Of a DNA stretch of 64,000 bases, positions 29,113 to 59,524 are shown piece after piece. Every line of letters starts with the position of its first letter. The stretch's first letter is position 1. Location: positions 186,001-250,000 of IMG/VR virus record IMGVR_UViG_3300045971_000344. One strand, 5' to 3'. Position numbers and translations under genes: made by a program. The notes beneath the pieces are model-generated. The model had not been told where the DNA came from. It made no database searches and was given only the letters and a program-made list of their open reading frames with translations.

Positions 29113-29697
29113 TTAAAATGCTATGTTCATTATGTAATTCATATTCGCTGTAAGGCCTGTAATCTGAAGAGTGTTTTGTGCTGTATTCCAGTTTATCGCA
29201 CCAACTGCCGCTCTAGACCCAGGTGTATCCCTAAAACAAATATATTGAATTGCATAATAGCTAGAGCCAGTACCTACACCAAATCCAGACGGAACGGTAA
29301 CAAGAAAGTTAGTATTAGTTGAAAGCTGAGTTGAAGTTAAATACAGAGAAGCTGTTATTATTTGTACTCCAACGGGAACAGTAATAACTGCAGTTGGAGG
29401 ACTTCCACTTATTGTAATATCTACTCCTGACCCTGTAGCTAATACCTGACAATTTGGGCTCGATGCTGTTGCGTATCTTGTTATAGACGCACCACCACCA
29501 GCTTGTCCCTGAAAACCTTGTGCTCCTTGGTAACCTTGCGCTCCCTGCGGTCCCTGCAATCCTAAGGCTTCTAAGGATTGTCCCACTCCCTTACCCATGA
29601 ATAATTGTTTAGTATCAAGGGTTAAAAGCAATTCACCAAGATCAGCGGAACTAGGTAGGTTGGCAAAATTACCCCTTTTTAAGAGTATTTTTGTCAT
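29113..29697 (-). CDS. Fibre protein with Mtd-N/hyaluronidase-N-like domain and short collagen segment
   Basis: ILLKRG...LGELLLTLDTKQLFMG followed by GxQ triplets. Confidence 0.7.
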   Translation of the reverse strand: MTKILLKRGNFANLPSSADLGELLLTLDTKQLFMGKGVGQSLEALGLQGPQGAQGYQGAQGFQGQAGGGASITRYATASSPNCQVLATGSGVDITISGSPPTAVITVPVGVQIITASLYLTSTQLSTNTNFLVTVPSGFGVGTGSSYYAIQYICFRDTPGSRAAVGAINWNTAQNTLQITGLTANMNYIMNIAF

Positions 29698-29711
29698 TAT
29701 TAAACCTCACG

Positions 29712-29746
29712 GTGGAGTGCAGTGAGCATTACTCACTGCACTCCAC
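29712..29746. repeat. Perfect 15-bp inverted repeat (hairpin without U-tract)
   Basis: GTGGAGTGCAGTGAG-catta-CTCACTGCACTCCAC. Confidence 0.85.
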
Positions 29747-29757
29747 TAACCTTTAGA

Positions 29758-30702
29758 TTAAAATGCTCCGCCGTCTACGGTACCAACTGAAAGTACACCT
29801 GTTGTAAAGACCAAACCATCACCAGCGACTGTTGGGTCAAGTTGGAAGTCATTAACGCTTTTTGTTACACCGGTTGATGCTGTGTAGGTAACTATGGCCG
29901 ACATACGGGCTGTGATCTCAGTGTTAAGGGCAGCTTGAAGAGTACTATCAGCAGATGTCCGGGCAGTGATTTCAGTGTTCAAGTTAGAGGTTAAGGTACT
30001 GTCCGCACTTGTACGGGCCGTGATCTCAATGTCCAGGGCAGCTGAAGTAGCTTTGTCGCCTACAGATGTAAGAAGTGTACTAAGGGTACCTTCATCTGCC
30101 TGAAGAGCGGTAGCAAGTTCTTGGAGGGTATCAAGAGTAGCTGGGGCAGTACCAACCAGATCAGCAATAGCAGCCTTACGAGCAGTTACTTCAGTATCAA
30201 TTGCTGCTTGAACTGTTGAAACCGCGGATGTTCGGGCCGTGATCTCAATCAATAAATCAGAGGCTACTGTACTAACTGCAGAAGTCCGTGCAGTGATTTC
30301 AGTCAACAGGTCCGCTGCTACAGTACTAACTGCAGAAGTCCGGGCGGTGATTTCGGTATTAAGGGCCGTAACATCTGCTTTTCCATCCAGTGCTGATTGG
30401 AGCGCAGTACTATCTGAAGGTACACCAGTCAAGGACGCAAAACTCGCGGCCGCTGCTTCAGGTGCAAGAATAACCCAAGTAGTACCGTTATGACGCTTCA
30501 TTACGTTATTAGTTGTGTCTACCCACAAGCGGGTAGTATCGGAGGGGGCTGAGGTAGCAAAGTTTACATCTGTAACTTTAGCAACGCCTGTACCCGTACC
30601 GATATAAAGTTCATTAGTGTCGGTAGTTACCAACGGTTCACCGACAGTTGCAGTTGCAGGAAGATTGGCTTTCAAACCACGCTTTAGTAGAACTTGTGTC
30701 AT
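29758..30702 (-). CDS. Fibre protein with Mtd-N-like domain, EITAR repeats and C-terminal DGG motif
   Basis: VLLKRG...GEPLVTTDTNELYIG, EITAR repeats and APATLDTLQELA; ends VDGGAF. Confidence 0.75.
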   Translation of the reverse strand: MTQVLLKRGLKANLPATATVGEPLVTTDTNELYIGTGTGVAKVTDVNFATSAPSDTTRLWVDTTNNVMKRHNGTTWVILAPEAAAASFASLTGVPSDSTALQSALDGKADVTALNTEITARTSAVSTVAADLLTEITARTSAVSTVASDLLIEITARTSAVSTVQAAIDTEVTARKAAIADLVGTAPATLDTLQELATALQADEGTLSTLLTSVGDKATSAALDIEITARTSADSTLTSNLNTEITARTSADSTLQAALNTEITARMSAIVTYTASTGVTKSVNDFQLDPTVAGDGLVFTTGVLSVGTVDGGAF

Positions 30703-30738
30703 GTTTATTTCTCCTTTTTTGTCTTTTTATTATTCGTA

Positions 30739-30754
30739 AGTAAATTACGAATTT
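30739..30754 (-). promoter_or_regulatory. Putative phage late promoter (identical to 11278-11293)
   Basis: AAATTCGTAATTTACT, about 40 nt upstream of the 30702 start. Confidence 0.5.
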
Positions 30755-30767
30755 CAAATATTGATTG

Positions 30768-31346
30768 TTAAAATGTTCCGGAGTCAACTACTTGTGACCA
30801 AGACAAACTACGATCTTTGTTTCCAAATAAAACTGAGCTATCTTCAGATGGTACCGGCAATTCAGGTTGTAGAGCGATTGGGTTATTTGTAGTTAGTGAA
30901 GGATTACTTATACTTAAGTATTTACTGTGCCTAGTTGATTCTACGTTCCTAATTGCGGCAATAAAAAATTCATCTACGCCATTAACAAACATGGAAGTTA
31001 TTGCCATTGTTCCTAAGTCATCTGTTGCACCAATTACTGCCTGTGAACTTTGCAAGGGGTAATCATAAGTTGTCCAGCCGGAGGGCTGTGCTTCTAGCAT
31101 ATCCCATTTTAAGATCACCCTTAAGAAAGCTCCATTGGTAGCCACATCAATAGTTGTTATCTTAAATCTAAGAGCTCCTAATCCTAATAAAGCACAGTCA
31201 GAATAAACTACGTCTCCTAGTTTAGCGTCCATTGCACTGAATACACCAGTGTTATCAATTACAGTTCCCTCTAAAACCCACTCATCTGTAGTTCCACCCA
31301 CAGGGGTGACAGATGAAATATCCAGCCTACCATTTAGCACATTCAT
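30768..31346 (-). CDS. Virion protein; paralog of 28434-29099
   Basis: GTVIDNTGVF...GDVVYS; ends VDSGTF. Confidence 0.7.
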   Translation of the reverse strand: MNVLNGRLDISSVTPVGGTTDEWVLEGTVIDNTGVFSAMDAKLGDVVYSDCALLGLGALRFKITTIDVATNGAFLRVILKWDMLEAQPSGWTTYDYPLQSSQAVIGATDDLGTMAITSMFVNGVDEFFIAAIRNVESTRHSKYLSISNPSLTTNNPIALQPELPVPSEDSSVLFGNKDRSLSWSQVVDSGTF

Positions 31347-31356
31347 CTAACACCCC

Positions 31357-33720
31357 TTAAAACACGAGATTTATCCAACACGGCTGACTGTTCTGCGTAA
31401 ACCCTGTTAGCTTCAGCGTGTGGGAATTTGTTCCAAAATTTCCGAAAACTGTTGACTTATTAGCATACCCTGCTCCATCATCTGAGAAAACTTGAAACTG
31501 TGGACAGTACAGGGTGCTATACGCAGTATACAGAGAGGAAGATACTTCGGCTAAGTCAATGGTTACTCCAGATGTTGCAGTCGACATGTCCGTTGCAGTC
31601 ATGTGGATACTCATACTATGAAGTATCGTATTAGCAGCAACTGAAATCTTAACATCCGTTGTCTGACTACTTCCATCTTTTAGGTATGCTATAGCCGTAG
31701 AATATTCTGTAGGTGCGTCTAAAGATGCTACTGTTGCATAACTATTTGAGGAAGATAAAGGGTTCATTGTATTAGCTGATACACCACAGCGTATTCTAGC
31801 TGTCGTGTAGCCCCCAGTTGAACCTGACCCAGGCAAACCTTGAGGACCTTGTGGTCCTGCTACTGTTGAGGCCGTTCCTTGTGTTCCTTGTGAACCAGTC
31901 AGACCTTGGGGTCCCTGTGAACCTGTGTTACCTTGTGAACCTTGAGGTCCCTGACTTCCAGTCAAACCTTGAGGACCAGTACTACCTTGATTACCGGTTA
32001 CACCGATATTACCCTGACTGCCTTGACTACCGGTCAACCCCTGGTAACCTTGAGTGCCCTGACTACCAGTATTACCTTGATAACCTTGACTACCTTGTGC
32101 TCCAGTAGTTCCCTGTGCTCCTGTTAAACCTTGATAACCTTGAGGGCCTTGACTACCAGTTTGTCCTTGACTACCAGTGTTGCCTTGACTGCCAGTCAAA
32201 CCTTGAGTTCCTTGAGGACCCTGAATACCTTGAGCTCCACTTAAATCGGTAACGTAAGAATAAGCGTTGGATGCCCAAATATATAGTTTAGAATTATCTG
32301 GATCATTAACGTCATTAGTATTAATGACAGCAAATTCGCCGTTACTAATCCCCGTAGGACTAGTGTCCGCCAATAACTGCGCTACAGAAGTATAAACTTT
32401 CGAGACAGTAAAACCTTGTCCTGCAACGCCTTGACTGCCCTGAGGTCCTTGTGCGCCTTGGGATCCAGAAGAACCTTGTGTACCTTGTGTACCTTGAGAA
32501 CCAGTCTGGCCTTGTGATCCAGTTAGTCCTTGAGAACCTTGTGCTCCGACCAGGCCTTGACTCCCAGTTAAACCTTGTGTTCCTTGACTGCCTTGTGTTC
32601 CCTGACTGCCTTGTGTTCCTTCATTTCCTTGTGGTCCAGTTAACCCCTGTTGACCTTGACCTCCAGTGTTGCCTTGATAACCTTGAGGGCCCTGACTTCC
32701 AGTCAAACCTTGGGTTCCAGTTAATCCCTGAGGACCTTGACTTCCAGTATTACCTTGAGCTCCTTGACTACCGGTAAGACCTTGTGCACCTACCTGACCT
32801 TGAGGTCCTTGACTTCCGGTGTTACCTTGTACTCCCTGTGCTCCTGTTAGGCCCTGAGGACCTTGCACTCCAGTATTACCTTGAGTTCCAGTATTTCCCT
32901 GCGATCCTTGACTACCAGTTTGTCCTTGTACTCCCTGTGCTCCTGTTAGGCCTTGAGGACCTTGGACATTAGACGGAGCACCAATTTGTCCTTGGTAACC
33001 TTGGTAGCCCTGATTACCTTGAGTACCAACCGCACCTTGGACACCTTGTGTTCCCTGAGCTCCAGTTATTCCTTGTACGCCTTGAGTGCCCTGAGGTCCT
33101 TGTGCACCGACCGTTCCTTGTACCCCATCTGTTCCTCGGGCAATAAAAAGTTCCCAGTAAACACCGCTAACAGGAGTTTCATTGGTATTGGTAGTCAAAC
33201 AAACCCACGCCTCACCGTTATAGTTAACTATATCGGCTGGTGCATAAGTTGTAATTGATGCCCAATTACCTTTGTAAGATCCAGTTAAGCCAATTGAACC
33301 TTGAATACCTTGAGTTCCTTGTTGACCTTGGATACCCTGAGGTCCTTGATATCCCCTAGGTCCTTGTGCACCTTGAGGACCTGACCCTCCGGATCCACCT
33401 GTGCCTAACTGCTGACCGTTCCACGTTGGGTTGCCCACACCGTCCACGCCCAGCATTTCAAGCGCAGTTCCATTAGTATGAGCGTGCATGGATACAAGTT
33501 TCCAGTTTGCATTGTTAGCATACGCTGCCTGTGTTTCAGTTCCTGTAAACTCAAACTTGTAGTAAGTATTAGTCGAGCGAACAAAAACAATCATCCCTTT
33601 ATAGCGATAACCCGCAGGAATGGCATCCCTCTCAGCAACGGTATTAACGGATTCTCGACTATCCAGTGCCTTGTTGACCACATCAACAAAAATTTGTCCG
33701 CTTATAGGGTTTCCTTTCAT
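31357..33720 (-). CDS. Collagen-like (Gly-X-Gln) fibre protein
   Basis: 787 aa. N-terminal LDSR...RYKGMIVFV domain, about 150 GxQ-type triplets, and a C-terminal domain resembling that of 29113-29697. Confidence 0.85.
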   Translation of the reverse strand: MKGNPISGQIFVDVVNKALDSRESVNTVAERDAIPAGYRYKGMIVFVRSTNTYYKFEFTGTETQAAYANNANWKLVSMHAHTNGTALEMLGVDGVGNPTWNGQQLGTGGSGGSGPQGAQGPRGYQGPQGIQGQQGTQGIQGSIGLTGSYKGNWASITTYAPADIVNYNGEAWVCLTTNTNETPVSGVYWELFIARGTDGVQGTVGAQGPQGTQGVQGITGAQGTQGVQGAVGTQGNQGYQGYQGQIGAPSNVQGPQGLTGAQGVQGQTGSQGSQGNTGTQGNTGVQGPQGLTGAQGVQGNTGSQGPQGQVGAQGLTGSQGAQGNTGSQGPQGLTGTQGLTGSQGPQGYQGNTGGQGQQGLTGPQGNEGTQGSQGTQGSQGTQGLTGSQGLVGAQGSQGLTGSQGQTGSQGTQGTQGSSGSQGAQGPQGSQGVAGQGFTVSKVYTSVAQLLADTSPTGISNGEFAVINTNDVNDPDNSKLYIWASNAYSYVTDLSGAQGIQGPQGTQGLTGSQGNTGSQGQTGSQGPQGYQGLTGAQGTTGAQGSQGYQGNTGSQGTQGYQGLTGSQGSQGNIGVTGNQGSTGPQGLTGSQGPQGSQGNTGSQGPQGLTGSQGTQGTASTVAGPQGPQGLPGSGSTGGYTTARIRCGVSANTMNPLSSSNSYATVASLDAPTEYSTAIAYLKDGSSQTTDVKISVAANTILHSMSIHMTATDMSTATSGVTIDLAEVSSSLYTAYSTLYCPQFQVFSDDGAGYANKSTVFGNFGTNSHTLKLTGFTQNSQPCWINLVF

Positions 33721-33778
33721 TCGTACCCCCTAACGATAAAGTTACCTTGTCCCATAAAGGTCCTCCAATAGTTATTGT

Positions 33779-34366
33779 TTAAATAATGTAGCGTATTGTT
33801 TTACCACTTAAAGACAGGCAAGGATCTGCTGTAAAGTACACATAAAAGTCAACACCATCATAAGTAACTTCTCTAGGAAGGACTTCGTAAGATGCAAGAA
33901 TAGAAGCATAGCTAAAATTAGGATCCTGGACGTCAACAATAGGCCCATAGCTCTTAGGATAAGCAAAGGTCCTATAAGTTACATTAGACGTATAGATAAC
34001 ATCTTTAGGTCCACCTTGCCATTGCATGGTTGTCAAACCCGCAAAGAATCCTGGAGGGTCAAGTATTGGATCATTAGTAAGTACGTCCCCAAAATAGACG
34101 TTGGTTGCAACATTATTTGTGAATCTAAAAATTACATCCAGTGCTTCGGACACAGTCCTCACGTCTACTTGCTCATTGAAACGATTAGAGAATGCCGATC
34201 TAACATAGGGCATTTCAGAAGCGGAAACTGGACGTCCGCCGGGTGTTACACCATCACCTACCCAAAGTTGTAATACATCTGTACACCATACGAGCTCACC
34301 ATTAGCAAAGACCACCCCAACTCGCTCAGAGTTTGTTCCTCTTCTGACCTGAATACAATTTGACAT
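33779..34366 (-). CDS. Mtd-N-like domain virion protein
   Basis: IQVRRGT...GELVWCTDVLQLWVGDG.T.GG. Confidence 0.7.
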   Translation of the reverse strand: MSNCIQVRRGTNSERVGVVFANGELVWCTDVLQLWVGDGVTPGGRPVSASEMPYVRSAFSNRFNEQVDVRTVSEALDVIFRFTNNVATNVYFGDVLTNDPILDPPGFFAGLTTMQWQGGPKDVIYTSNVTYRTFAYPKSYGPIVDVQDPNFSYASILASYEVLPREVTYDGVDFYVYFTADPCLSLSGKTIRYII

Positions 34367-34385
34367 AGACTATTCTTCCTTTCCT

Positions 34386-34619
34386 TTATTGTATTGTTCC
34401 ACCATCGTACTTAACACTGTCAACAGGATACACATCCTGAATTAAGCCCCCATCTATGTGCTCCATTAGATGGGTGAAGCGATCCCTACAGGTTCCACCA
34501 TCTATTAAGGCATGTAGGTTAAACAGATTCCTAGGTATAGTGTCTGCGGCAGTATATTCAGACAGGGCAATAACATTACCTTGTCCATCATATACCAGTT
34601 TAACCGGATATATGTCCAT
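34386..34619 (-). CDS. Small virion adaptor with three DGG motifs
   Basis: Start reassigned to ATG 34619 (AAAGGGG RBS). Contains LIDGG, HIDGG and KYDGG. Confidence 0.6.
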   Translation of the reverse strand: MDIYPVKLVYDGQGNVIALSEYTAADTIPRNLFNLHALIDGGTCRDRFTHLMEHIDGGLIQDVYPVDSVKYDGGTIQ

Positions 34620-34719
34620 TATGGATACCCCTTTATGTTTATATACATATAAATTATGTATTGTTTGTTCTATATTGATTATGAAATACGTAGCAAAATT
34701 AAAGAATCTTAATTTTCGG

Positions 34720-35300
34720 GGCGCCGCGCTAAGTGTTGCATCCCGCACGCTGTGCTAGCACAGCGTGCTTTCAATAAGCATCTAGATCCGGTTCTGCTAG
34801 CGATACTCAACAAAGTGAAGTATATAGTGCTTCTGAGCTAGCTCAGAAGCTAAAGGTAAGCGTGGTTAGATTTGGAAAATGCTAAGAAAGGAAGGATAAA
34901 GGGAAGTGATAAGCGAAGTAAGTACAGCAATAAGTAAAGTACCGCCGAAGGCGGATTGAAAATCCCAAAAAAAAAAAAAAAGAAAAGCTTTCCAGATTTT
35001 AGGTACAGTGAGGGTTTTATGGAAAGGGCCTAGTGAACCTAGTGAGGTTAGAGCTATCCATTACCGCCCTACCACCGCACCTTTCACACTGTCCTCATGC
35101 TCTTTCAATCTTTTCCCTTTTGTACTGTTCCTTGTACCCTAACTCCCAGGTTATCGATCTTACGGCAGACTACGTCTGCCATGTCTCGAGCTAAGCTCTC
35201 AACATTTGAGAAACTTCGTTTCTCTAGCATTGTTTATCATTGTGAGACAATGCGCGGTCGCAAGAAATCCCGCGGAAACGGGATTTACTGATAAAATTAC
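34720..35300. other. Candidate replication origin / structured DNA control region
   Basis: Perfect 24-bp and 22-bp palindromes centred on GCTAGC, C-GNA-G triloop hairpins on opposite strands, an A15 run and a purine-skew inversion, all close to the coding-strand switch. Confidence 0.5.
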
Positions 35301-35374
35301 AAATAAACATAAAAATTATAAAAAATACAAGTAATTTATGTATTTCTATAGGATTTTATGAGAATTCGGGTACA

Positions 35375-36870
35375 ATTATCAGGGTGTTGGGTTATGGTCT
35401 CCAGGTCGTGCATTACAACCACAAGCTTGAGTCATAAGCTAGTACCAAACACCTCCTACACGGACGGTTTACTTTCATCTGGAACAGCACCCTTATTTAG
35501 CGAGGAGTGCCACCCTCGACTACCTGACTCTTAGGTACTTGCCTAAGACTCTCGTATCCTCTTGTCGGATACGGCCACGCTGGTAGTTTTTGTTCTATAA
35601 ACAGTGTTGGAATATTATTCCGCAGTTCATAGAACGTTGCGTGGTCTACATGCCAGGACATGTTAGATTAGATACCTGGTCCCATTACCTAGCCTTCAAT
35701 TCATAAGTATTCGGTGCGCTTTCGGTACACACCTACATATATTGTTTTAAGCTCATCCTTATGAGCAAAATACTTATGTTCTTGAAGATCGCAACCCTTG
35801 GGGTTAGGGCTCCCCAGTCTGATGGATTCTTATCGTACTTGGTCTAAACAAGTTAGAACCCTGTTTCCGATAGTCATTTCGTGCCAATGTACTTTCGTAG
35901 CGCAGGTCTCGATGGACCCGACTATTGGCCTTATCGCTGTTACGGAAGTAACGATCTTCCTACAGCTCATTCCATTGTGCTGGTAATAGTGAGTAGGGTG
36001 AGTACCTTTATACTCTGATATTAGGCATTGTCCACATTTTGTGTGGTAATGGAAGACATTATCTGCATAAGCACATTGCGTAGCGGTAGTTAGCCCCTCG
36101 CTTCCGTGGTCTCCATGTGGGACTCAATCCCACCTCCCGAGTATGACAATTGCGGTCGCCTTTAATCTCGGACATAGCCTTTCTCTAGATCTTATCTGTG
36201 CGTATCTGCGATGTGCTTAAACGCCATTCATACCTTTATACTCAACCTAGGTCACTATGCCTATATCTGAAGAGTAAACCTGGAGAATTTTTACAGATTT
36301 TAAAAATCTACGTGCGTTTGATCCGCGTTCAGGTACAGTGTACCCTTCGACTTACGCCTCGTTTTCGTAGATCTTTCGGTGGATCCAAAGCCACCATAAC
36401 CCAAACAACTCAGAATGAAAACCTGATTACCGCAACATTACGCCCTTGGGTTAAAACCTCCGGGGCAGCCCGAGTATCGTAGTACCTACTATTTCCTGTA
36501 GGTTAGCATTGGGCTATGCCTTCTCGTGACTGTGTTGCCTTCATCCTCGGATAATCAGTGATCCTGATTTGCACTATTAGACTCGGATATATAACGCATC
36601 ATATCTACTTAGATTTGGTTAAACCGTCTTTAGGATAGACGATAAGACCGATTGAAGTTTACGAAACTTATCACATAACGGACAGGTTCTTTAAAGGAGA
36701 ATAGTCAGAAAAACCTTGTGGGGTTTGTAGGGGCTCGCGCATCCTACTTCCTCTGTGAGGCATTCGTAAAGTTCCCGCTCAATGCCCGCGGTACTAATGC
36801 TCTTGGTACAGCGTACTCATAACTGGTTACAACAAGACAGTTGTCTCCACTTATCAGGACGATGTACTTC
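35375..36870 (-). ncRNA. Candidate very large (~1.5 kb) structured non-coding RNA of unknown class
   Basis: No credible long ORF. More than 25 hairpins seen by eye. G-U pairs and GNRA loops favour the minus strand. A 12-bp perfect long-range helix joins 36393-36404 and 35387-35398. A CGTAATTTG motif lies upstream. Confidence 0.7.
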
Positions 36871-36901
36871 TCTTATTTACATTATTCACTCGTTGTATAA
36901 A

Positions 36902-36910
36902 CAAATTACG
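36902..36910 (-). promoter_or_regulatory. Putative late-type promoter for the large ncRNA (CGTAATTTG)
   Basis: Matches the RTAATTT motif seen upstream of virion operons. Confidence 0.4.
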
Positions 36911-36951
36911 TAGTTCAGCAATGACGTTAAAAAATACGTCTAGTGTGTACC

Positions 36952-36994
36952 TAGTACAACCCAGTAACGCTTATGACTTTACTGGGTTGTACTA
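36952..36994. repeat. Perfect 16-bp inverted repeat downstream of the RuvC-like gene
   Basis: TAGTACAACCCAGTAA-N11-TTACTGGGTTGTACTA. Confidence 0.85.
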
Positions 36995-37016
36995 CATTAA
37001 GTAACTATAATCTTAA

Positions 37017-50155: not shown

Positions 50156-51355
50156 ATGGCTATCAGAATATGGGAATATGGGTCATCCCCAGAAGCAGTA
50201 AATCAGAGTACGACTAATGTCCAGATTGTGGTTGGAAACCCTATTTCCTGTTCTGAGCAATTTTTGTCTACCGAGACGGGGGTTCCTTTGGAGCCCCTTT
50301 CTGGGTATCCTATTGTCCAAGTATTAGAGGGAGTTGACCTCATTACATCCACAATAGGTTATAGAAACAATAACGCTCTGCCCGGGGAGTGGACCGCGGA
50401 TCTAACAATCCCGCCCACAATAGAATTCAATTCTGGTAAAGAGAAGATACTTACCTTATCTTGGATATTTAAGTCCCTTGAAGGAACGGAAAAGTCCAAT
50501 CAGTATATAACCGTTGTACCCAAAGACGATGTCTACTCTGAGGACTACAAAGAGATTGTTTTACTTGGACCAGTACAGGACTTGAAGGTTACTGTCCCTT
50601 ACATAATAAACGTTCTGGCAGGTGACATTGCAGAATATACGTTATACGATGAAAACTCCCCTATCTCTTCAGGGAAAGCCGCAGACTCGGCTATAAATGG
50701 TCCTCACAGCGTTCTGTCTTTTACTGTAATCAGCCCCTTGTTTGTTCCACGACTTCGTCCATATAATCTTGTTATTACCTTGCGCTTTAACACCGCTGTC
50801 CGTCAGTTGTTTTCCAACGTATATCAGATTAATCCTACCATACTTAGTGCGATGCAGGCTCTAGAACTATCCATAAATAAGGCAAATCAAATTGAGACAA
50901 TTAGAGGACTCCAGTTCCGTGAGGTAGACCTTTTACAAGGATTAACCCGGGGACTCGACTACTTCAATAACGTACCGCCTACCCTAACGAGTTTCACCGG
51001 CGTCTGCATGACAGGCGGTATAAGAGAGGGCTGGCTCGTCTGCGCGTCAATCCGGTCCCTTAGAGCACAGCTACAGTCGGAGGGGATGTTCCAATTTGAT
51101 TTTTCTGGACAAAATATTAGTCTTAATGTTGACCGTCAGCAGGCAATAGAGAGTGCTTGTGGTCATTATGAATCATTAGTCGATACTATGGTCAGGCCCT
51201 TGAAGATCATACTGGGTAAAAAGGGCGTAGTAAACGGTGATGGCTCATTAGGTGATAAATTGGCATTGATGTCTTCAATGGGTCTGACCAGACTGAGTAA
51301 TAATGCTATAACTCGTTCTAAGTTAGGCAATCCATTATACCCTAGGACATGGTGA
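50156..51355 (+). CDS. Putative neck/head-tail adaptor structural protein
   Basis: Beta-rich N-terminus and a helical C-terminus with LDYFN..PP.LT and FDFSGQNISLNVDR. Function inferred. Confidence 0.45.
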   Translation: MAIRIWEYGSSPEAVNQSTTNVQIVVGNPISCSEQFLSTETGVPLEPLSGYPIVQVLEGVDLITSTIGYRNNNALPGEWTADLTIPPTIEFNSGKEKILTLSWIFKSLEGTEKSNQYITVVPKDDVYSEDYKEIVLLGPVQDLKVTVPYIINVLAGDIAEYTLYDENSPISSGKAADSAINGPHSVLSFTVISPLFVPRLRPYNLVITLRFNTAVRQLFSNVYQINPTILSAMQALELSINKANQIETIRGLQFREVDLLQGLTRGLDYFNNVPPTLTSFTGVCMTGGIREGWLVCASIRSLRAQLQSEGMFQFDFSGQNISLNVDRQQAIESACGHYESLVDTMVRPLKIILGKKGVVNGDGSLGDKLALMSSMGLTRLSNNAITRSKLGNPLYPRTW

Positions 51356-53410: not shown

Positions 53411-54727
53411 ATGATATGTATTAAGCGATATAGGGTCCATATAAGAACCACAGCTAAAGAAGTATTGGCTAAAAACGATGACGAATGGTTTAAGGGCCTA
53501 ACTAAAGAACAGCAAAAGCAGTACTTGGAAGAACACCCAAATAGTAAATTTGCTAAAACCTTTAAGGCTAAAGAAGATGAGAATGGCCAATCAGGATCTA
53601 AAAAGACTGGCCCAGCCAAAGTAAAAAAAGAAAAGACTGACCCTTATAAAGATGTACCCGAAGAAGATAAAAAGGTCATGCTGGCGGCAAAGACTCGCGG
53701 ATATAGAGTGCCTCCTGCGTGGAGAAATGTGTGGCTCAATCCTAACCCAAAGGCTGATCTTCAGGTTAAAGGTAAGGATGCAAAGGGCCGTACTCAAAGT
53801 GTATATACTGCGTCTTTTAGAGCCGCTCAGGATATAAAGAAGTTTAACCGCCTAAGAGATTTCACTAAGGCCTATAAAGGTATGCGGACCCAGATAGACA
53901 AGGACTTTGATGAATCTCCTGAGGCACAGTGTTTATATTTGATAGCCAAGACAGGATTCAGGATTGGCAGCTCCAAAGAGACTGGCGCGAAGGTTAAAGC
54001 GTACGGAGCATCTACTCTTACTGTTGACCATATCTCAATAGATGGGGACATTATTAACTTTGATTTTACTGGTAAAAAGGGCGTACACCAGAAACATGAG
54101 ATTGTAGATGCAAAGCTCGCTAAAATGCTGAGTACTAAGAAAGAGGGCTTATTATTTGAGACGAATGGAGCAAAGATACATAAGTATTTAGAATCCTTAA
54201 ATCCAGAACAAAAATTTGAGGTCAAAGATTTTAGAACATACGTTGCTACCTCCACAGCTCTATCTTCGGTATCCTCTATGGAAGCCCCTAGGACTAAAGC
54301 AGAATATATAAAATCCGTAAATAAGGTCTGTAAGACTGTTTCAGAAAAATTAGGTAACTCCCCAGACATGGCTAAAAAGTCTTATATAGATCCTACCGTC
54401 TTCAAGGAATGGCAATCGAATATAACTGACCCGGATGTAGAGACCTCGAGTGATTCTATTGGGCCTTATTTCTGTCTAGCTATGGACAAAGAACAGCAAC
54501 TTATGCAGGACTTTATAGAGTGCAATCACTATAGGATTCCAGATAAGGTAGTTATAGCCCTTAAGAGAGTTATTAAACTTCCTCGTGGAAAAGATAGAGA
54601 GATCGCCTATTCTGCCTTCCAAAAGCTCGCAAAGGTTTTCAACTTAGTAGATACTTCAAGTAAAAAGGTCTACATAGACTCTCTCCGTGAGATCGAAAAG
54701 ATTGCACGTTCACAGGGTGATTTATGA
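53411..54727 (+). CDS. DNA topoisomerase IB (poxvirus/bacterial type) with N-terminal leader and WF-HPNSKF module
   Basis: Motifs PPAW..V, G.D.KGR.Q..Y, GFRIG, F.GKKG, KDFRT and LGN.P..AKKSYI (catalytic Tyr). Confidence 0.9.
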   Translation: MICIKRYRVHIRTTAKEVLAKNDDEWFKGLTKEQQKQYLEEHPNSKFAKTFKAKEDENGQSGSKKTGPAKVKKEKTDPYKDVPEEDKKVMLAAKTRGYRVPPAWRNVWLNPNPKADLQVKGKDAKGRTQSVYTASFRAAQDIKKFNRLRDFTKAYKGMRTQIDKDFDESPEAQCLYLIAKTGFRIGSSKETGAKVKAYGASTLTVDHISIDGDIINFDFTGKKGVHQKHEIVDAKLAKMLSTKKEGLLFETNGAKIHKYLESLNPEQKFEVKDFRTYVATSTALSSVSSMEAPRTKAEYIKSVNKVCKTVSEKLGNSPDMAKKSYIDPTVFKEWQSNITDPDVETSSDSIGPYFCLAMDKEQQLMQDFIECNHYRIPDKVVIALKRVIKLPRGKDREIAYSAFQKLAKVFNLVDTSSKKVYIDSLREIEKIARSQGDL

Positions 54728-54972
54728 GTCGTCTCGTAGTTATCGCCGGCTCGGCCTGTAAAGGCTGTGGGGAGTCGAATACTATAAAAGACAAGCGTAG
54801 GGACTACGTAGATGTAGATAACAGCGATGAAATGCAGACTTTTAGGGTCTGTCGTCTTTGTGGACACAGGGAAATTATAAAGACACGAATGACGGTCCGT
54901 AAACGCGCAAGGCAGGATAAGCTGGCTGGTCTAGCTGACCTAATAAACGAATTGACCAATAGAGGGCAATAG
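54724..54972 (+). CDS. Zinc-ribbon protein
   Basis: CKGC...CRLC. Confidence 0.65.
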   Translation: MSRLVVIAGSACKGCGESNTIKDKRRDYVDVDNSDEMQTFRVCRLCGHREIIKTRMTVRKRARQDKLAGLADLINELTNRGQ

Positions 54973-54974
54973 AT

Positions 54975-55292: not shown

Positions 55293-55333
55293 GGGTCTTT
55301 GTAATTTATTAATAACAATGATGAGGAGAAATC

Positions 55334-55633
55334 ATGAGAACGATAAGGGTAAGTATTGAGACCACCAAGACTACTGCGGCATCTCCGAAGGGAATTATCC
55401 AAGTATTCTTCTGTAATGGCTTGAATACTGCAATGGGTAAAGGCGTTATCTTTCCTACTAAGGCTGAGGCAGTTGAGTATGCTATTAGCAAGTTAAGAAC
55501 AAGCAGTAATTTATTTAGTTCAAAAGTATGTTTAGATACAGTTGACTCTAAAGGATGGACTTCACAAGAAACTCTCGCTGAGTTTGTAAAAAACAGCTCG
55601 GGTAAGGTTTGCAAATTAGTTCCAGTAAAATAA
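55334..55633 (+). CDS. Leader-bearing hypothetical protein
   Basis: Begins MRTIRVSIETT; preceded by GTAATTTA (55301) and GAGGAG. Confidence 0.65.
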   Translation: MRTIRVSIETTKTTAASPKGIIQVFFCNGLNTAMGKGVIFPTKAEAVEYAISKLRTSSNLFSSKVCLDTVDSKGWTSQETLAEFVKNSSGKVCKLVPVK

Positions 55634-55697
55634 TAAATATCAGGAGCACTTGTCCATGACAAGACAAATACAAACAGCAGGACAAAGGAGAAGGGTC

Positions 55698-56522
55698 ATG
55701 AAAGAAATCGGGAAATCAATTATTCAGGAATTAGCGGCAAACATGGATCGTCTCACTGTTGGCATCGAGAGCTTCAAGACACACGGAGACAAGAGCAAGG
55801 TTCGTGTATCAGTAATTGCAACTTCGGACTCAAACAAATCTGATATCTTGAAGTCAATTAACTCACAGTTCGGTGGTCGTCTTAGGGCAGTTGCTCGCTC
55901 ATTCCGTATCGTAGAATCGTCTAATGCGGACCGTAATAACGTAACTTTTAAGCTCCAGGGATACGTTGTACCAAATGTAGAAATAGTGGCCGCATCTTCT
56001 GAGCAGGGAAAGAAAATGAAGTGTGTTGCGTCCAATATGTTTATGGACCAGTCTGATTGCATTTGGAGCAAAACTGGAGATTTCTTATATAAGAAATCAG
56101 ATGTTGAGACCGCAGAAGAACTTAATCAGTTTCTTACTGAGTGTAGCTCAACCACAACCCGGGTCAGAAAGGGCCTTGATTTTGAGACCGTAGTGGCCTC
56201 CGCAGGAGATTTCGTCCGTTACTTGAGTAAAGGTGAAATGTGCTGTGGTATTGTAGTAGCGGCCGATGAAACAAATCATAAGCTCATGGTACTGGCCGAA
56301 GGTGAAGAAGACCCAGAAGTTATTGATACTTTTGACGTCCAGGATAGTCTGCCCGTAGATGATGAGAAAGTACGCTTTCCTGAAGAGACGGACATGGTTG
56401 AGACCTCGGCGTCAGCCGTAGATATTAACGCCATCGTTTCTTACTACAAGCGTTGGTTTACCTACAATCCCAACTACGCCCAGATGCTGATTGACCGATT
56501 GAATCAGCATGCCTTTTGCTAA
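55698..56522 (+). CDS. Putative head/virion structural protein
   Basis: Start at ATG 55698 (AAGGAG RBS). Several internal [VI]x[AT][SA] sites (IVAAS, CVAS, VVAS, VETSAS). Confidence 0.6.
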   Translation: MKEIGKSIIQELAANMDRLTVGIESFKTHGDKSKVRVSVIATSDSNKSDILKSINSQFGGRLRAVARSFRIVESSNADRNNVTFKLQGYVVPNVEIVAASSEQGKKMKCVASNMFMDQSDCIWSKTGDFLYKKSDVETAEELNQFLTECSSTTTRVRKGLDFETVVASAGDFVRYLSKGEMCCGIVVAADETNHKLMVLAEGEEDPEVIDTFDVQDSLPVDDEKVRFPEETDMVETSASAVDINAIVSYYKRWFTYNPNYAQMLIDRLNQHAFC

Positions 56523-56612
56523 AAAGAATTTACCCATATAGACTGTTTCGTTTTTGACCGCACACGTCCTTTAAGGATGACCTAACTGAGCGTAAAACAA
56601 ATATGTGGGTTC

Positions 56613-56650
56613 TGGGGTGGGGTGGTGATTAACTTTACTACCCCACCCCA
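56613..56650 (+). terminator. Strong GC-rich hairpin (no U-tract)
   Basis: TGGGGTGGGGTGGTGA/TTACTACCCCACCCCA, a 16-bp stem with two G-U pairs on the plus strand. Confidence 0.55.
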
Positions 56651-56683
56651 ACAATATTATTATTATATACTGTAGGAGAGTTT

Positions 56684-57013
56684 ATGAAAGTACGTTCAAT
56701 TGCCATTAAAGGCGAAGGAATAGAACTGGCTAAAGTTGCGATCCATGCAAAGAGAAACCGAATGAAGGGTATGTACGATAACACAAACCCTACGGCTATG
56801 GATATTTATAAAGCCCGTCATAAGTATGACTTTAAGCACGAGTTCAATAAGTTCATAGAAGATAACTACGTAGATGTTATATCCAAGACAGACCGTAAGG
56901 CTCTAATGCAGGCCGTAGAGACACACTACAATGAGGGCTGTATAGAGAACGTAGAAGACCTTAAAAGACATATTGAGGTCATAGGTAAGCGTGAAGGCAT
57001 AATCTTTGATTAA
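56684..57013 (+). CDS. Hypothetical protein
   Basis: AGGAG RBS; 109 aa. Confidence 0.65.
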   Translation: MKVRSIAIKGEGIELAKVAIHAKRNRMKGMYDNTNPTAMDIYKARHKYDFKHEFNKFIEDNYVDVISKTDRKALMQAVETHYNEGCIENVEDLKRHIEVIGKREGIIFD

Positions 57014-57031
57014 ACCATATAGGTGTGAACT

Positions 57032-57691
57032 ATGAAGACCCCAAAACGTACAGAAGTGGAATTGAGTACCTCAAGTAAGAGTAAGAAGCCTGTTAAAGTA
57101 AAGAAGGATTGTACTGATGTAAAGCCCGCCTTAGAAGTGAAAAAGAAGAAAAGGACTCCTGAACAGAAAGCAAAACGACTTGAAAAAATAAAGGCCAAAG
57201 TAGTGGCGGAAGAAGCGGTTGCACTCAAGCTCATTGATGACATTCATTTAAAGGCAAAAAAGAAGTTCAATGGTGAAGATGACCATAAAGAAGTTTATTT
57301 GGATATGTTTCGCCAATTGAGAAGAATAATAAAGAAAACAGAACGGTCCTGTCTTAAGTCAAAGAACGGTCAAGGTGCGTATCAACTTGCTACGTTGTAT
57401 ACTCAGTTAAGGGAAGTTCTGGCTGAGATTAGAGCCTACACGGATCTTTCTGACCATGTTGACTCTATGATTGAGCGCGTAATGAAACCCCTTTTTACTA
57501 CATTAGTACAAAGTACATCCAATGCAATGTACCAAACAAAAATAAAAATAAAAGACAAATTGAAAGAAAAAAGGGTCAGGCGGACCTTCGAAGACATAGA
57601 TGAAATAACACTTGACCAGGCGAATCAATTGCAGACACAGTATGATAAGGCCTGTCAGACAATAAGAGAGATTTTAATAGGAAATACGTAG
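57032..57691 (+). CDS. Helical hypothetical protein with basic N-terminus
   Basis: 219 aa. Confidence 0.7.
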   Translation: MKTPKRTEVELSTSSKSKKPVKVKKDCTDVKPALEVKKKKRTPEQKAKRLEKIKAKVVAEEAVALKLIDDIHLKAKKKFNGEDDHKEVYLDMFRQLRRIIKKTERSCLKSKNGQGAYQLATLYTQLREVLAEIRAYTDLSDHVDSMIERVMKPLFTTLVQSTSNAMYQTKIKIKDKLKEKRVRRTFEDIDEITLDQANQLQTQYDKACQTIREILIGNT

Positions 57692-57720
57692 TCATTAATA
57701 AAGATTTGAGGTAAACCTTT

Positions 57721-58590
57721 ATGGCATATCATAAGTTACAAGTAACTATTTCAGCGGCAGGTGGTGGAAAGTCCACGCATGACCATCCTAAGGGACTTTC
57801 TAAGCCAGCTAGCTCTGGTGATAACTGGTTTGACCGTTTAAGTGAGGACGAGCAGACGGAATATATAGAGTCGCATCCTAATTCAAAGTATGCTAAAAAT
57901 ATTCACCGTGTTGACCACGAAGACCAATCGGATAAGAGTAAGAAGAAATCCGGATCTGATACTAAAAATCCAAAAGCAATGCGCCATGTATTGGCTGATA
58001 AAATAAAGGTCCTACCTAAGAAACACAAAGAATTTTTTGAGACCGAGCAGGACCAACCCAATTCAGAACAACGTTCAGGTATTGCAAAGCACATACGATT
58101 GAACCATAAAGAAATAGTTAAGCACATGAAAGGTCAGATTGTAGAGTGGAAAGATGGATGCGGGGCTATTGCAAAGCTCGCTACTGGTAAGTCCATTTCG
58201 GCACATGAAAAGAAAGCATTGAAGGCCCTAGTTATAGATGCATCCGTTATAGCTGCTTCTGTTGCTGTAACAGGTGGGTTTGCTCACGGAGCAGCGCTGG
58301 CATTGAAGCACGTTGGATTCGATGTCTTAAAAGATGTTGTACTCAAAACGGTTATAAGAGGAACTACAAGAGCAATGGGCGCATCTACAGGAGTAACTGG
58401 ACTGGTAGGCTTAGAAGCCTTGGCTACTACAGCTGCCTCTAAGAAAGTAAACCCAGATAGAATAAACGATAAGATAATGAGCATGCTGGTTAAACAGCTT
58501 GCGGCCTATATTGAAAAGGGTGATATCCCTAAAGAGGCTTGGGATAAGGCTATTGATGAATTGGCTGCAACTAATAGGAAGCGTAAATGA
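57721..58590 (+). CDS. Leader plus WF-HPNSKY module protein with hydrophobic Gly/Ala-rich segments
   Basis: DNWFDRLSEDEQTEYIESHPNSKYAK; hydrophobic stretch ALVIDASVIAASVAVTGGFAHGAALAL. Confidence 0.7.
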   Translation: MAYHKLQVTISAAGGGKSTHDHPKGLSKPASSGDNWFDRLSEDEQTEYIESHPNSKYAKNIHRVDHEDQSDKSKKKSGSDTKNPKAMRHVLADKIKVLPKKHKEFFETEQDQPNSEQRSGIAKHIRLNHKEIVKHMKGQIVEWKDGCGAIAKLATGKSISAHEKKALKALVIDASVIAASVAVTGGFAHGAALALKHVGFDVLKDVVLKTVIRGTTRAMGASTGVTGLVGLEALATTAASKKVNPDRINDKIMSMLVKQLAAYIEKGDIPKEAWDKAIDELAATNRKRK

Positions 58591-58868
58591 AAGCCCGTTC
58601 AGCGTATGGCGCGTATAAGCAAGCACAAAGAACAATCCTTAAACAAAGACCTACGGCTAAACAGATTAGAACATCCAGTTATGGCGATGACTGGTCAAGT
58701 ATAAGTGCTACTTGTCTTAAGCTAGCAAATTATACTTGTAGCTGTGGATTGAAGGCAAATAGGGCGCATCATATTATTCCTCTATCTAAAGGCGGATCAA
58801 ACGCTCAGTTTAACCTAAAAGCAGTCTGTGAGGTCTGCCATAAAAAATATCATAAGCACCTGCGATAG
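58587..58868 (+). CDS. Small HNH endonuclease (paralog of 43777)
   Basis: YG.DW...C..LAN..C...AHHI.PL.KGG.N...NLKA.C..CH...H. Confidence 0.85.
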   Translation: MKARSAYGAYKQAQRTILKQRPTAKQIRTSSYGDDWSSISATCLKLANYTCSCGLKANRAHHIIPLSKGGSNAQFNLKAVCEVCHKKYHKHLR

Positions 58869-58909
58869 TATGTAGGGAATTAAATCTAATAAATGAGTGG
58901 GAGCAGCCT

Positions 58910-59158
58910 ATGGCTCGTACACAAGTAAATGCTGCACAGATCCTAAATGGAACAATACAAAAAGAGGACTTGAATACTAATACTCCAGGTAAGGCTGTAA
59001 TAACAAATTTAATAGCTGGTAATGGTATATCTTTAAGTAGCTCCGGCGTAGATCAAGGTACAGGATCAGTTACAATAAACGTAGTTAGAAATATTGATGG
59101 AGGTTCTCCAGATTCTGTCTACGCGAGAACACAGTCGATAGATGGAGGAGGACCTTAA
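58910..59158 (+). CDS. Small virion adaptor with two IDGG motifs
   Basis: Begins MARTQVNAAQI; contains NIDGG and SIDGG. Confidence 0.65.
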   Translation: MARTQVNAAQILNGTIQKEDLNTNTPGKAVITNLIAGNGISLSSSGVDQGTGSVTINVVRNIDGGSPDSVYARTQSIDGGGP

Positions 59159-59524
59159 ATGGCAGATTTAATTCAATTACGTGGTGGAGACTCGGCACAT
59201 TGGTCATTGGCCAACCCTGTACTTATGTCGCGTGAAGTAGGAATTGAGACAGATACTAATAGGATGAAGATTGGTGATGGAGTTACAAATTGGAATGATT
59301 TACCTTACCCTGCTACTTCTAATCATACTCATTTGACCTTTATTTTTAATCAAGATACTCCCAGTAACGTCTGGAATATAAATCATGGTCAAAATAAATT
59401 TCCTTCGGTTACTATCGTAGACTCAAGCGGCAGAGTAGTTATTGGACAAATAACTTATGTTGATCTTAATAATGTTCAACTTGACTTCAATGAAGGCTTT
59501 TCGGGAAAAGCCTATCTAAATTAA
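59159..59524 (+). CDS. Mtd-N-like domain virion protein
   Basis: IQLRGG...W...NPVL...EVGIETDT..MKIGDG.T.W..LPY, followed by a W.I.H....FPSV domain. Confidence 0.75.
   Translation: MADLIQLRGGDSAHWSLANPVLMSREVGIETDTNRMKIGDGVTNWNDLPYPATSNHTHLTFIFNQDTPSNVWNINHGQNKFPSVTIVDSSGRVVIGQITYVDLNNVQLDFNEGFSGKAYLN

What the first reader, a model, noticed from the sequence alone, without database searches (positions are those of the whole stretch)
29113..59524. DGG-peptide / Mtd-N domain gene pairing suggests a plug-and-socket chain for building branched fibres
Seen in sequence: all four Mtd-N-like genes in the window are immediately preceded, in transcription order, by a gene ending in a D[GS]G motif. The pairs are 34386-34619 (LIDGG, HIDGG, terminal YDGGTIQ) before 33779; 30768 (terminal VDSGTF) before 29758; 29758 (terminal VDGGAF) before 29113; and 58910 (NIDGG, terminal SIDGGGP) before 59159. 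Gene 29758 carries both parts, so it could extend a chain. Established knowledge: the Mtd N-terminal domain is the virion-proximal part of Bordetella phage Mtd trimers. Inference: the DGG peptide is the docking ligand, and multi-DGG adaptors create branch points for a hairy virion.
Basis: partly seen in the sequence, partly recalled or inferred. Interest (0 to 1): 0.66.

Follow-up and report, generated by a model that had tools for sequence, protein, structure and literature searches.

The report
Typed plug-and-socket joints between phage fibre proteins
In this 295-kb phage, and in many unrelated phages, a short C-terminal "DGG" peptide on one fibre protein is almost always followed by a gene whose product starts with the Mtd-N domain. 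Statistics, a natural fusion and a controlled complex model all indicate that the peptide docks into that domain, so fibre segments join in gene order.

Summary
All four N-terminal Mtd_N genes in the window follow a gene ending in h-D-[GS]-G-x-x. Only 6 of about 399 ORFs in the genome end that way (chance about 1e-8).

Across IMG/VR and prokaryote genomes, a DNA pattern for the two-unit tail (N-x-DGG-x-P-D-S-V-Y) gave 71 hits. All 71 lie 22-25 residues from a stop codon, and all 71 are followed at once by a canonical Mtd_N gene. In an unbiased Mtd_N sample, 36% of upstream genes carry the tail against 1.2% of other ORFs (p = 2e-23).

Plug type tracks socket type. KRG..LP sockets, as in genes 29758 and 29113, follow tails ending exactly in D-x-G-x-F-stop in 25 of 38 cases. 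RRGT..W sockets do so in 0 of 78 (p = 3e-16).

One contig fuses two DGG units and a socket in a single ORF. A 3+3 complex model scored ipSAE 0.79, best control 0.00.

No solved structure and no searchable paper describes this joint.

The 77-aa/195-aa pair has no support from other genomes. The "branch point" and "hairy virion" parts of the claim are unsupported. Binding is inferred, not measured.

The parts
58910..59158 (+). 82-aa carrier. Its last 22 residues (nt 59090-59155) form the canonical two-unit plug N-I-DGG-S-P-D-S-V-Y ... I-DGG-G-P-stop.
   Evidence: No Pfam, PHROG or close homologue for the whole protein, but the tail aligns with 31 distinct tails from other phages.
59159..59524 (+). 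121-aa socket protein. Type-A Mtd_N occupies residues 5-43, followed by a small C-terminal domain. The ATG directly abuts the TAA of the carrier.
   Evidence: Mtd_N 47.5 bits. PHROG hits to N-termini of tail fibres and hyaluronidases. Junction sequence. Complex model.
34386..34619 (-). 77-aa carrier (the ORF may start at GTG 34748) with three DGG units spaced about 16 residues apart; it ends YDGGTIQ.
   Evidence: An orphan by all searches.
33779..34366 (-). 195-aa socket protein (RRGT-type Mtd_N, residues 5-41) plus a C-terminal domain.
   Evidence: Mtd_N 32.4 bits. phrog_9648 tail protein. Relatives in IMG/VR lack a DGG-tailed upstream gene.
30768..31346 (-). 192-aa base adaptor. Its N-terminal domain of about 135 aa is shared with the 221-aa protein at 28434-29099. 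It ends in the F-type plug VDSGTF-stop (nt 30771-30788).
   Evidence: The F-type plug class is defined.
29758..30702 (-). 314-aa extender: a type-B socket (KRG..ANLP..GE..DT) at the N-terminus, a repeat-rich rod, and the F-type plug VDGGAF-stop (nt 29761-29778) at the C-terminus.
   Evidence: Mtd_N 39.4 bits. Pattern match. Tail alignment.
29113..29697 (-). 194-aa terminal piece: a type-B socket, a short collagen-like stretch and a C-terminal domain. It has no plug.
   Evidence: Mtd_N 19.5 bits, below the cut-off. It matches the type-B DNA pattern. phrog_3904 tail fibre.

Best explanation
These genes encode modular, probably trimeric, virion fibres whose segments are joined non-covalently in gene order.

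The proximal protein ends in a short 'DGG tail' (the plug). The next gene's product begins with the roughly 45-residue Mtd_N domain (the socket). The plug lies against the first strand of the socket (residues 2-10, the IQLRRG strand) and against its conserved Trp/Pro positions.

At least two plug-socket types exist:
- Type A: a two-unit tail, N-h-DGG-x-P-D-S-V-Y ... h-DGG-x-x-stop, with RRGT..W..NP..GE.G.E.DT..K.G.G sockets. In the window this is the 82-aa to 121-aa pair.
- Type B: a tail ending exactly in h-D-[GSAC]-G-x-F-stop, with KRG....LP.....GE.....DT sockets. In the window this is the chain 192 aa to 314 aa to 194 aa, where the 314-aa protein carries both a socket and a plug.

What is shown: the motifs, the adjacency, the enrichment across genomes, the type covariation, the fusion and the in-silico complex. 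What is inferred: physical binding, trimer stoichiometry, and plug-proximal/socket-distal polarity. Polarity is supported by carriers with baseplate-connector similarity and by Mtd sitting at fibre ends.
For: (1) Window and genome: 4 of 4 pairs; only 6 of about 399 ORFs end this way.

(2) Plug to socket: the DNA pattern for N-x-DGG-x-PD[ST]VY gave 69 IMG/VR loci and 2 prokaryote contigs. All are in frame and 22-25 residues from the stop. All are followed, at -16 to +28 nt (mostly an ATGA overlap), by a gene starting with canonical Mtd_N. The set holds 31 distinct tails, 43 distinct sockets and 16-23 socket clusters at 70-80% identity. Carriers span 34-1707 aa stop-to-stop, the shortest cut by a locus end.

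(3) Socket to plug: in an unbiased sample of type-A sockets, 28 of 78 dereplicated upstream ORFs have D[GSCA]G in the last 8 residues, against 9 of 722 other ORFs (odds ratio 44, p = 2e-23). In a separate rescan of the same loci (all stop-to-stop ORFs of 60 aa or more), six further tail-positive ORFs turned out to precede divergent sockets.

(4) Covariation: 25 of 38 type-B sockets follow tails ending D-x-G-x-F-stop, against 0 of 78 type-A sockets (p = 3e-16). P/Y-type first units occur in 13 of 78 type-A cases and 0 of 38 type-B cases.

(5) Fusion: L139 encodes collagen, two DGG units, a linker, Mtd_N and collagen in one ORF.

(6) Complex model: 3 x 121 aa plus 3 x the last 38 aa of the carrier scored ipSAE 0.79, with the best of 3 controls at 0.00. 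That mark was reached by 58 of 80 solved complexes and 2 of 110 mismatched pairs; these counts hold only roughly because my own alignments were used. The runs share at least 88% of contacts, and the partner's pLDDT is at least 53. The interface is socket residues 2-10, 14-15, 17-18, 20, 25 and 45 with the R-N-I-D-G-G-S-P-D-S and Y of the tail. That covers 7 of the 8 invariant tail positions and 8 of the conserved socket positions (Q6, R8, R9, G10, W15, P20, G25, W45).

(7) Synonymous codons in the first unit are diverse, so selection acts on the protein.

(8) Named phages follow the rule: MellowYellow gp36 (..LIDGGTP) to gp37 (socket ... TIDGGTP) to gp38 (socket); Gordonia phage TinaLin gp29 (..FDGGEL) to gp30; and, in degenerate form, BPP-1 Bbp9 (..ADLGGIA) to Mtd.

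(9) Carriers are collagen-like or tail-fibre-like, and one family resembles a baseplate-wedge/tail-fibre connector.
Against: No binding was measured. The complex test covered only the canonical pair and used a job type that differs from its calibration.

The model places only the first DGG unit with confidence. Three of the four window pairs have only a terminal unit, or a divergent tail.

The association is frequent but not universal: 36-53% for type-A sockets and 66% for type-B. T4-like cyanophages (Syn19), Herelleviridae and Aeromonas phage MQM1 have sockets without DGG-tailed neighbours. The closest relatives of the 195-aa gene have none either.

The genome's two internal sockets have no plug in front of them. 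Two DGG-ended ORFs are not followed by sockets.

In 23 of 40 junctions the terminal GG codons also form the Shine-Dalgarno sequence of the socket gene, so part of that unit's conservation may be at the nucleotide level.

The sampled loci are related to unknown degrees, so the p-values overstate independence.
Confidence: 0.8

Rival explanations
1. The conserved junction is mainly a nucleic-acid or evolutionary device: a standard cassette boundary for recombinational swapping of distal fibre modules, plus translational coupling and an embedded Shine-Dalgarno sequence. On this view the tail does not bind the Mtd_N domain.
For: Most junctions are ATGA overlaps. The terminal DGG codons contain GGAG/GAGG at -18 to -4 of the start in 23 of 40 junctions, including the window's GAT GGA GGA GGA CCT TAA ATG. 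Carriers and socket proteins are highly mosaic.
Against: The first unit lies about 66 nt upstream and is conserved as protein with free synonymous variation. Three window pairs and many other loci keep the tail despite 19-65-nt gaps. The plug type, including a strictly terminal Phe, covaries with the socket type. A fusion keeps both elements within one chain. The complex model passes its controls. Modular exchange is better seen as a consequence of a standard joint than as an alternative to it.
Confidence: 0.07
2. The DGG tail is a self-contained C-terminal element of fibre proteins, such as a trimerisation cap, a collagen registration signal or a chaperone tag. It sits next to Mtd_N genes only because fibre genes cluster.
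For: 14 of 39 carriers have collagen triplets directly before the tail, and 30 of 43 socket proteins have collagen after the socket. Some DGG-ended ORFs are not followed by sockets.
Against: Generic clustering cannot explain 71 of 71 immediate adjacency. It also cannot explain why other fibre-like ORFs in the same loci lack the tail (1.2% background), the type-specific covariation, or the zero score when either partner is replaced in the complex controls.
Confidence: 0.06
3. One reading: each DGG unit binds a separate Mtd_N trimer, so carriers with 2 or 3 units are branch points that build a branched, hairy virion.
For: The complex model leaves the second unit without confident contacts. In L107 a two-unit tail is followed by two consecutive small socket genes. 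BPP-1 fibres are reported to carry two Mtd trimers each (PMC2408619). The capsid protein's nearest GenBank relatives are Erwinia jumbo myoviruses of about 260 kb, and a 'hairy' Erwinia jumbo phage, vB_EamM_Y3, is cited by title in PMC7824862; kinship to Y3 was not tested.
Against: Two-unit tails are the norm for a single downstream socket gene. The window's 3-unit and 2-unit carriers each precede one socket gene. The fused ORF in L139 has two units per one socket in the same chain. BPP-1's Bbp9 has only one degenerate unit. No data place these fibres on the head or sheath.
Confidence: 0.1

Closest known systems
Bordetella phage BPP-1 Mtd (PDB 1yu0-1yu4) and its upstream gene bbp9
   Same: Mtd gives the socket domain its name. 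It is a trimeric receptor-binding protein at the ends of tail fibres (PMC2408619). Its upstream neighbour Bbp9 ends ..ADLGGIA, 15 nt before mtd. An IMG/VR phage (L144) with Mtd-like N-termini has ..TLDGGTF tails upstream.
   Different: The Bbp9 tail is a degenerate single unit (D-L-GG). Mtd matches the type-A profile only weakly (E = 0.04). How Mtd attaches to the fibre is not described in the papers I could search, and no paper mentions Bbp9.
Streptococcal prophage hyaluronidases HylP1/HylP2/HylP3 (PDB 2c3f, 2dp5, 2yvv, 3eka, 6x3m)
   Same: They are the best solved matches to the type-A socket profile (E = 5e-14 to 1e-9). The socket is N-terminal and is followed by collagen-like repeats.
   Different: They were solved as isolated proteins without a partner peptide. 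In phage Javan513 the upstream endopeptidase ends ..IILDGRRDR, which is at best a weak variant.
T4 long tail fibre (gp34-gp35-gp36-gp37), from established knowledge
   Same: Trimeric segments encoded by consecutive genes are joined end to end, the C-terminus of one to the N-terminus of the next, and gene order mirrors assembly order.
   Different: No sequence similarity was detected (Pfam and PHROG scans). The T4 joints are not a short, widely shared peptide-domain pair.
Adaptor or branched receptor-binding systems (TP901-1 BppU/BppL; G7C gp63.1/gp66; CBA120 tailspikes with T4 gp10-like domains), from established knowledge
   Same: The N-terminal anchor domain of a distal protein docks on a proximal adaptor. 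Small adaptor proteins exist.
   Different: Those systems use larger globular domains. None of those families was found here. Branching is not supported here.
Trimerisation or registration domains of collagen-like and fibrous proteins (for example the T4 fibritin foldon), from established knowledge
   Same: A small terminal beta-structure sits next to collagen-like or coiled rods.
   Different: A foldon acts within one protein. Here the conserved elements sit on two different gene products and covary by type.

Membership tests
Pfam PF18454 Mtd_N | HMM score at or above the gathering cut-off of 26.3 bits | tested here: met
   59159-59524 scores 47.5 bits, 29758-30702 scores 39.4, and 33779-34366 scores 32.4 (confirmed).
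Pfam PF18454 Mtd_N | The same cut-off, applied to gene 29113-29697 | tested here: not met
   19.5 bits and 21.6 bits. The gene nevertheless shares the exact K-R-G-x4-L-P-x5-G-E-x5-D-T signature with gene 29758 and 43 distinct IMG/VR sockets (40 rows in alignment A5).
Pfam PF18454 Mtd_N | Trimeric beta-prism fold at the N-terminus of a fibre or receptor-binding protein | not tested
   N-terminal position is met (residues 5-43). The fold was not compared with 1yu0 or 2c3f. The trimer was assumed in the complex job.
DGG-tail / Mtd_N joint (class proposed here) | h-D-[GSAC]-G within the last 8 residues of the gene directly upstream on the same strand | tested here: met
   All four window pairs.
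DGG-tail / Mtd_N joint (class proposed here) | Plug type agrees with socket type: the two-unit P/Y tail with the RRGT..W socket, and D-x-G-x-F-stop with the KRG..LP socket | tested here: met
   82 aa to 121 aa is type A. 192 aa to 314 aa and 314 aa to 194 aa are type B. The 77-aa/195-aa pair fits neither class cleanly, and its relatives lack the pairing.
DGG-tail / Mtd_N joint (class proposed here) | Physical binding of plug to socket | not testable with these tools
   In-silico support only, for one pair: ipSAE 0.79 against a best control of 0.00.
T4-type long tail fibre proteins (gp34-37) | Sequence or profile similarity to gp34-gp37 families | tested here: not met
   No such Pfam or PHROG hits for any of the seven proteins.
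RTX-type calcium-binding GGxGxD repeats | Match to the haemolysin-type calcium-binding repeat profile | tested here: not met
   No Pfam hit at E <= 1 for the 77-aa and 82-aa proteins. The likeness (D-G-G-x-x-D) is only a recollection prompted by literature hits.
Branched-adaptor systems with T4 gp10-like domains | Presence of a gp10-like or adaptor domain | tested here: inconclusive
   No Pfam or PHROG hit. For the 192-aa protein there are only weak Atlas leads to gp9/gp10-N and baseplate-wedge clusters (score 0.83, TM 0.45).

The most novel reading that the evidence does not exclude
The joints form an orthogonal connector code, with at least two plug-socket types that do not cross-react. That would let one virion build several different fibres without mis-wiring. 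Proteins that carry a socket and a plug of the same type (the 314-aa protein here; MellowYellow gp37; the 626-aa protein in L107) could also add onto themselves head to tail. The result would be fibres of variable length, capped by a plug-less terminal protein (the 194-aa protein). This is a simple sequence-encoded way to build long, hair-like appendages.
Probability: 0.15. Interest if true: 0.85.

Novelty: new variant of a known kind. Interest (0 to 1): 0.78.

Why it matters
If the joint is real, it gives a sequence rule for reading fibre architecture straight from a phage genome: which protein is proximal, which is distal, and which tiny orphan ORFs are adaptors.

It would explain how Mtd-type receptor-binding proteins and HylP-type enzymes are held on virions, which the solved structures of the isolated proteins do not show.

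It would account for the extreme mosaicism of fibre genes, because any carrier can present any distal module of the matching type.

It would define natural exchange points and compatibility classes for swapping receptor-binding modules between laboratory phages.

It is directly testable in cultivable, harmless systems such as Arthrobacter and Gordonia phages.

Tried and rejected
- Close homologues of the 82-aa, 77-aa and 192-aa carriers: none in GenBank phages, the word-indexed protein collection or IMG/VR. The whole proteins are orphans; only their tails are shared.
- One type-B DNA pattern was mistyped by one N and found nothing. It was corrected and rerun.
- Frameshift or read-through fusion as a general explanation: rejected. 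In 38 of 40 junctions the socket frame is closed by a stop inside the tail. Only the window's 82/121 pair is in one frame across a single TAA.
- Pure Shine-Dalgarno explanation: rejected for the first unit and for pairs with 19-65-nt gaps.
- Memory of a solved complex as the source of the model score: unlikely. No PDB chain matches the tail profile (E <= 10), and sockets are solved only in isolated HylP and Mtd.
- Literature: the tail string 'PDSVY' occurs in no paper, no paper mentions Bbp9, and Mtd_N appears only as an annotation label. Subscription journals are not covered.
- Relatives of the 195-aa socket protein: found, but without DGG-tailed neighbours.
- Not used: the reads tools, the large representative search, and any alternative genetic code. 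None was needed.


Full report
**What the window is.** The window is bases 186001-250000 of a 294,944-bp IMG/VR virus record with 39% GC. It carries a major head protein (3836-4930) and a head-tail connector (50156-51355). The head protein is about 47% identical to those of Erwinia jumbo myoviruses of about 260 kb. The region of interest is a minus-strand cluster of fibre-like genes at 24436-34748, plus a second small cluster at 58910-61981 on the plus strand.

**Checking the observation.**
- Pfam gives N-terminal Mtd_N matches of 47.5, 39.4 and 32.4 bits for 59159-59524, 29758-30702 and 33779-34366.
- It gives a sub-threshold 19.5 bits for 29113-29697 (cut-off 26.3).
- A search of the whole genome finds no other N-terminal Mtd_N gene. 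There are two internal copies, near residue 1200 of two proteins of about 1400 aa outside the window, and no DGG motif precedes them.
- Only 6 of about 399 ORFs in the genome have D[GS]G within their last 8 residues. Four of those are exactly the upstream neighbours of the four Mtd_N genes. The chance probability is about 1.4e-8, allowing that the motif was chosen after the fact.

**From plug to socket in other genomes.** The small carriers have no close relatives. Relatives of the 121-aa socket protein, however, showed upstream genes ending in the same kind of tail as the 82-aa protein.
- I searched IMG/VR for a degenerate DNA pattern encoding N-x-D-G-G-x-P-D-[ST]-V-Y. It returned 69 loci. 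All are in frame, and all lie 22-25 residues from a stop codon.
- In all 69 the next gene starts within -16 to +28 nt, mostly as an ATGA overlap, and opens with a canonical Mtd_N sequence.
- The same pattern in 596 Gb of prokaryote genomes gave two hits, both with the same architecture.
- The set holds 31 distinct tails and 43 distinct sockets, forming 16-23 clusters at 70-80% identity. Carriers range from 34 to 1707 residues stop-to-stop, the shortest being cut by the end of its locus.
- Carriers are collagen-like or tail-fibre-like. One family resembles a baseplate-wedge/tail-fibre connector.
- No Pfam model covers the tail.

**From socket to plug.** An IMG/VR sample chosen only by the socket core (G-E-x-G-x-E-x-D-T-x3-K-x-G-x-G) gave 78 dereplicated N-terminal sockets with an evaluable upstream ORF.
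- 28 of them (36%) have D[GSCA]G in the last 8 residues of that ORF, against 9 of 722 (1.2%) for the other ORFs of the same loci. The odds ratio is 44 and p = 2e-23. A looser motif gives 41 of 78 against 14 of 722.
- In a separate rescan of the same loci, using all stop-to-stop ORFs of 60 aa or more, six further tail-positive ORFs turned out to precede divergent sockets that my pattern had missed.
- The rule is not universal. T4-like cyanophage sockets follow acidic tails, and other families follow unrelated termini.

**Two types, and covariation.** The sockets of genes 29758 and 29113 differ from the canonical one: K-R-G-x4-L-P-x5-G-E-x5-D-T, with no Trp.
- A pattern for this 'type B' socket returned 45 loci.
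- Of 38 dereplicated upstream tails, 25 end exactly in D-[GSAC]-G-x-F-stop. None of the 78 type-A upstream tails does (p = 3e-16).
- First units of the D-G-G-x-[PA]-x-x-x-[YF] kind occur in 13 of 78 type-A cases and 0 of 38 type-B cases.
- Only the last six residues are shared among otherwise unrelated type-B carriers.
- The window fits this split. VDSGTF and VDGGAF precede type-B sockets, and the two-unit P/Y tail precedes the type-A socket.
- This covariation is the strongest comparative argument for specific recognition between the two elements.

**A natural fusion and chains.**
- In L139 a single ORF reads collagen, two DGG units, a short linker, Mtd_N and collagen. This is a Rosetta-stone case that puts both elements in one molecule.
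- Chains of three occur elsewhere. In Arthrobacter phage MellowYellow, gp36 (69 aa..LIDGGTP) is followed by gp37 (socket ... TIDGGTP) and then gp38 (socket). L107 and L144 show the same layout. L144 includes a 74-aa protein that is nothing but a socket plus a plug.
- Gordonia phage TinaLin gp29/gp30 obeys the rule. So does BPP-1 Bbp9 (..ADLGGIA) before Mtd, in degenerate form.
- Herelleviridae and Aeromonas phage MQM1 type-B sockets follow baseplate or fibre proteins that have no such tail.

**Structure prediction.** I modelled three copies of the 121-aa protein with three copies of the last 38 residues of the 82-aa protein, using my own alignments.
- The score was ipSAE 0.79 (runs 0.78, 0.79, 0.79), with the best of three controls at 0.00.
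- That mark was reached by 58 of 80 solved complexes and 2 of 110 mismatched pairs. These counts hold only roughly here.
- The runs share at least 88% of their contacts. The partner's pLDDT is at least 53, and the other chains score 89.
- The confident interface is socket residues 2-10, 14-15, 17-18, 20, 25 and 45 against R-N-I-D-G-G-S-P-D-S and Y of the tail. Seven of the eight invariant tail positions are involved, together with the conserved Q6, R8, R9, G10, W15, P20, G25 and W45 of the socket.
- The second unit is not placed with confidence.
- The PDB holds sockets only in isolated HylP and Mtd proteins, and no chain matches either the tail profile or the type-B socket. The score is therefore unlikely to be recalled from a solved complex.

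**Rivals.**
- A nucleotide-level explanation fails for the first unit, whose synonymous sites vary freely. It also fails for pairs with 19-65-nt gaps.
- The terminal GG codons do double as the Shine-Dalgarno sequence in 23 of 40 junctions, including the window's own.
- Frameshift fusion is excluded in 38 of 40 junctions.
- Generic clustering of fibre genes cannot give 71 of 71 adjacency or type covariation.

**Branching.** Branching is not supported. Two-unit tails normally precede one socket gene, and the fused ORF has two units per socket.

**The 77-aa/195-aa pair.** This pair rests on the window alone, because relatives of the 195-aa gene lack a DGG-tailed neighbour.

**Novelty.**
- The searchable literature mentions Mtd_N only as an annotation label.
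- The tail string occurs in no paper, and no paper mentions Bbp9. Subscription journals are not covered.
- Serial end-to-end assembly of fibre proteins is a known principle (T4 gp34-37).
- This widespread, typed peptide-domain connector appears to be undescribed.

**Verdict.**
- The docking interpretation is well supported in silico (confidence 0.8).
- The branching and hairy-virion extensions are unsupported.
- Binding has still to be shown at the bench.

Noticed in passing
window 34800-37000: A 2.2-kb ORF-poor stretch lies just upstream of the fibre cluster. It has no tRNA and no Rfam hit at gathering threshold, and its GC is 0.44-0.47 against 0.39 for the genome. The minus strand at 35500-36450 folds with z = -5.5 (plus strand -2.8). 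There is a sub-threshold full-length match to EGFOA RNA (RF02955, 30.1 bits against 37.7, E = 0.006) at 35384-35488(-). It may be a structured non-coding RNA.
   Followed up: partly
G000:C1 159053-163117(-) and 163152-167372(-), outside the window: Two proteins of about 1400 aa next to baseplate-like genes carry an internal type-B Mtd_N motif near residue 1200, with no DGG unit in front. The genome also has two 'orphan' DGG-ended ORFs not followed by sockets: window 17680-22941(-), a 1753-aa collagen-like protein ending ..ADGGRNY, and G000 170786-172063(-), ending ..DDGGIA. Orphan plugs and orphan sockets could pair in trans.
   Followed up: partly
window 59140-59161: The junction reads GAT GGA GGA GGA CCT TAA ATG. 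The terminal DGGG codons are the Shine-Dalgarno sequence of the 121-aa gene. The two ORFs are in the same frame across a single TAA, so read-through would fuse them. In 23 of 40 junctions elsewhere the terminal unit likewise overlaps an SD-like sequence.
   Followed up: yes
window 28434-29099(-), 30768-31346(-), 24436-28092(-): The 192-aa and 221-aa proteins share an N-terminal domain of about 135 aa (E = 4e-11). By eye, the 221-aa and 1218-aa proteins share a C-terminal segment of about 60 aa. Weak Atlas leads link the shared N-domain to baseplate-wedge and gp9/gp10-N clusters, which would place these fibres at the baseplate rather than as hairs.
   Followed up: partly
window 23358-24353(-) and 9961-11265(-): Glycosyltransferase genes sit among the giant fibre genes: a GT9 heptosyltransferase-like gene, and a GT2 fused to a methyltransferase. 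This hints that the fibres may be glycosylated.
   Followed up: no
window 53411-54727(+): A type IB topoisomerase gene (Topoisom_I, E = 9e-27) lies within the structural gene region of the phage.
   Followed up: no
L013/L039/L138 (IMG/VR) small carriers: Many carriers of 59-70 aa consist only of an N-terminal I-D-F-P-x-S-P ... W-x-W-D-G-x-x-W motif plus the DGG tail. Similar Y/W-x-x-x-G-x-x-W motifs occur in the window's 314-aa, 648-aa and 787-aa fibre proteins. This may be a second, separate docking element.
   Followed up: no
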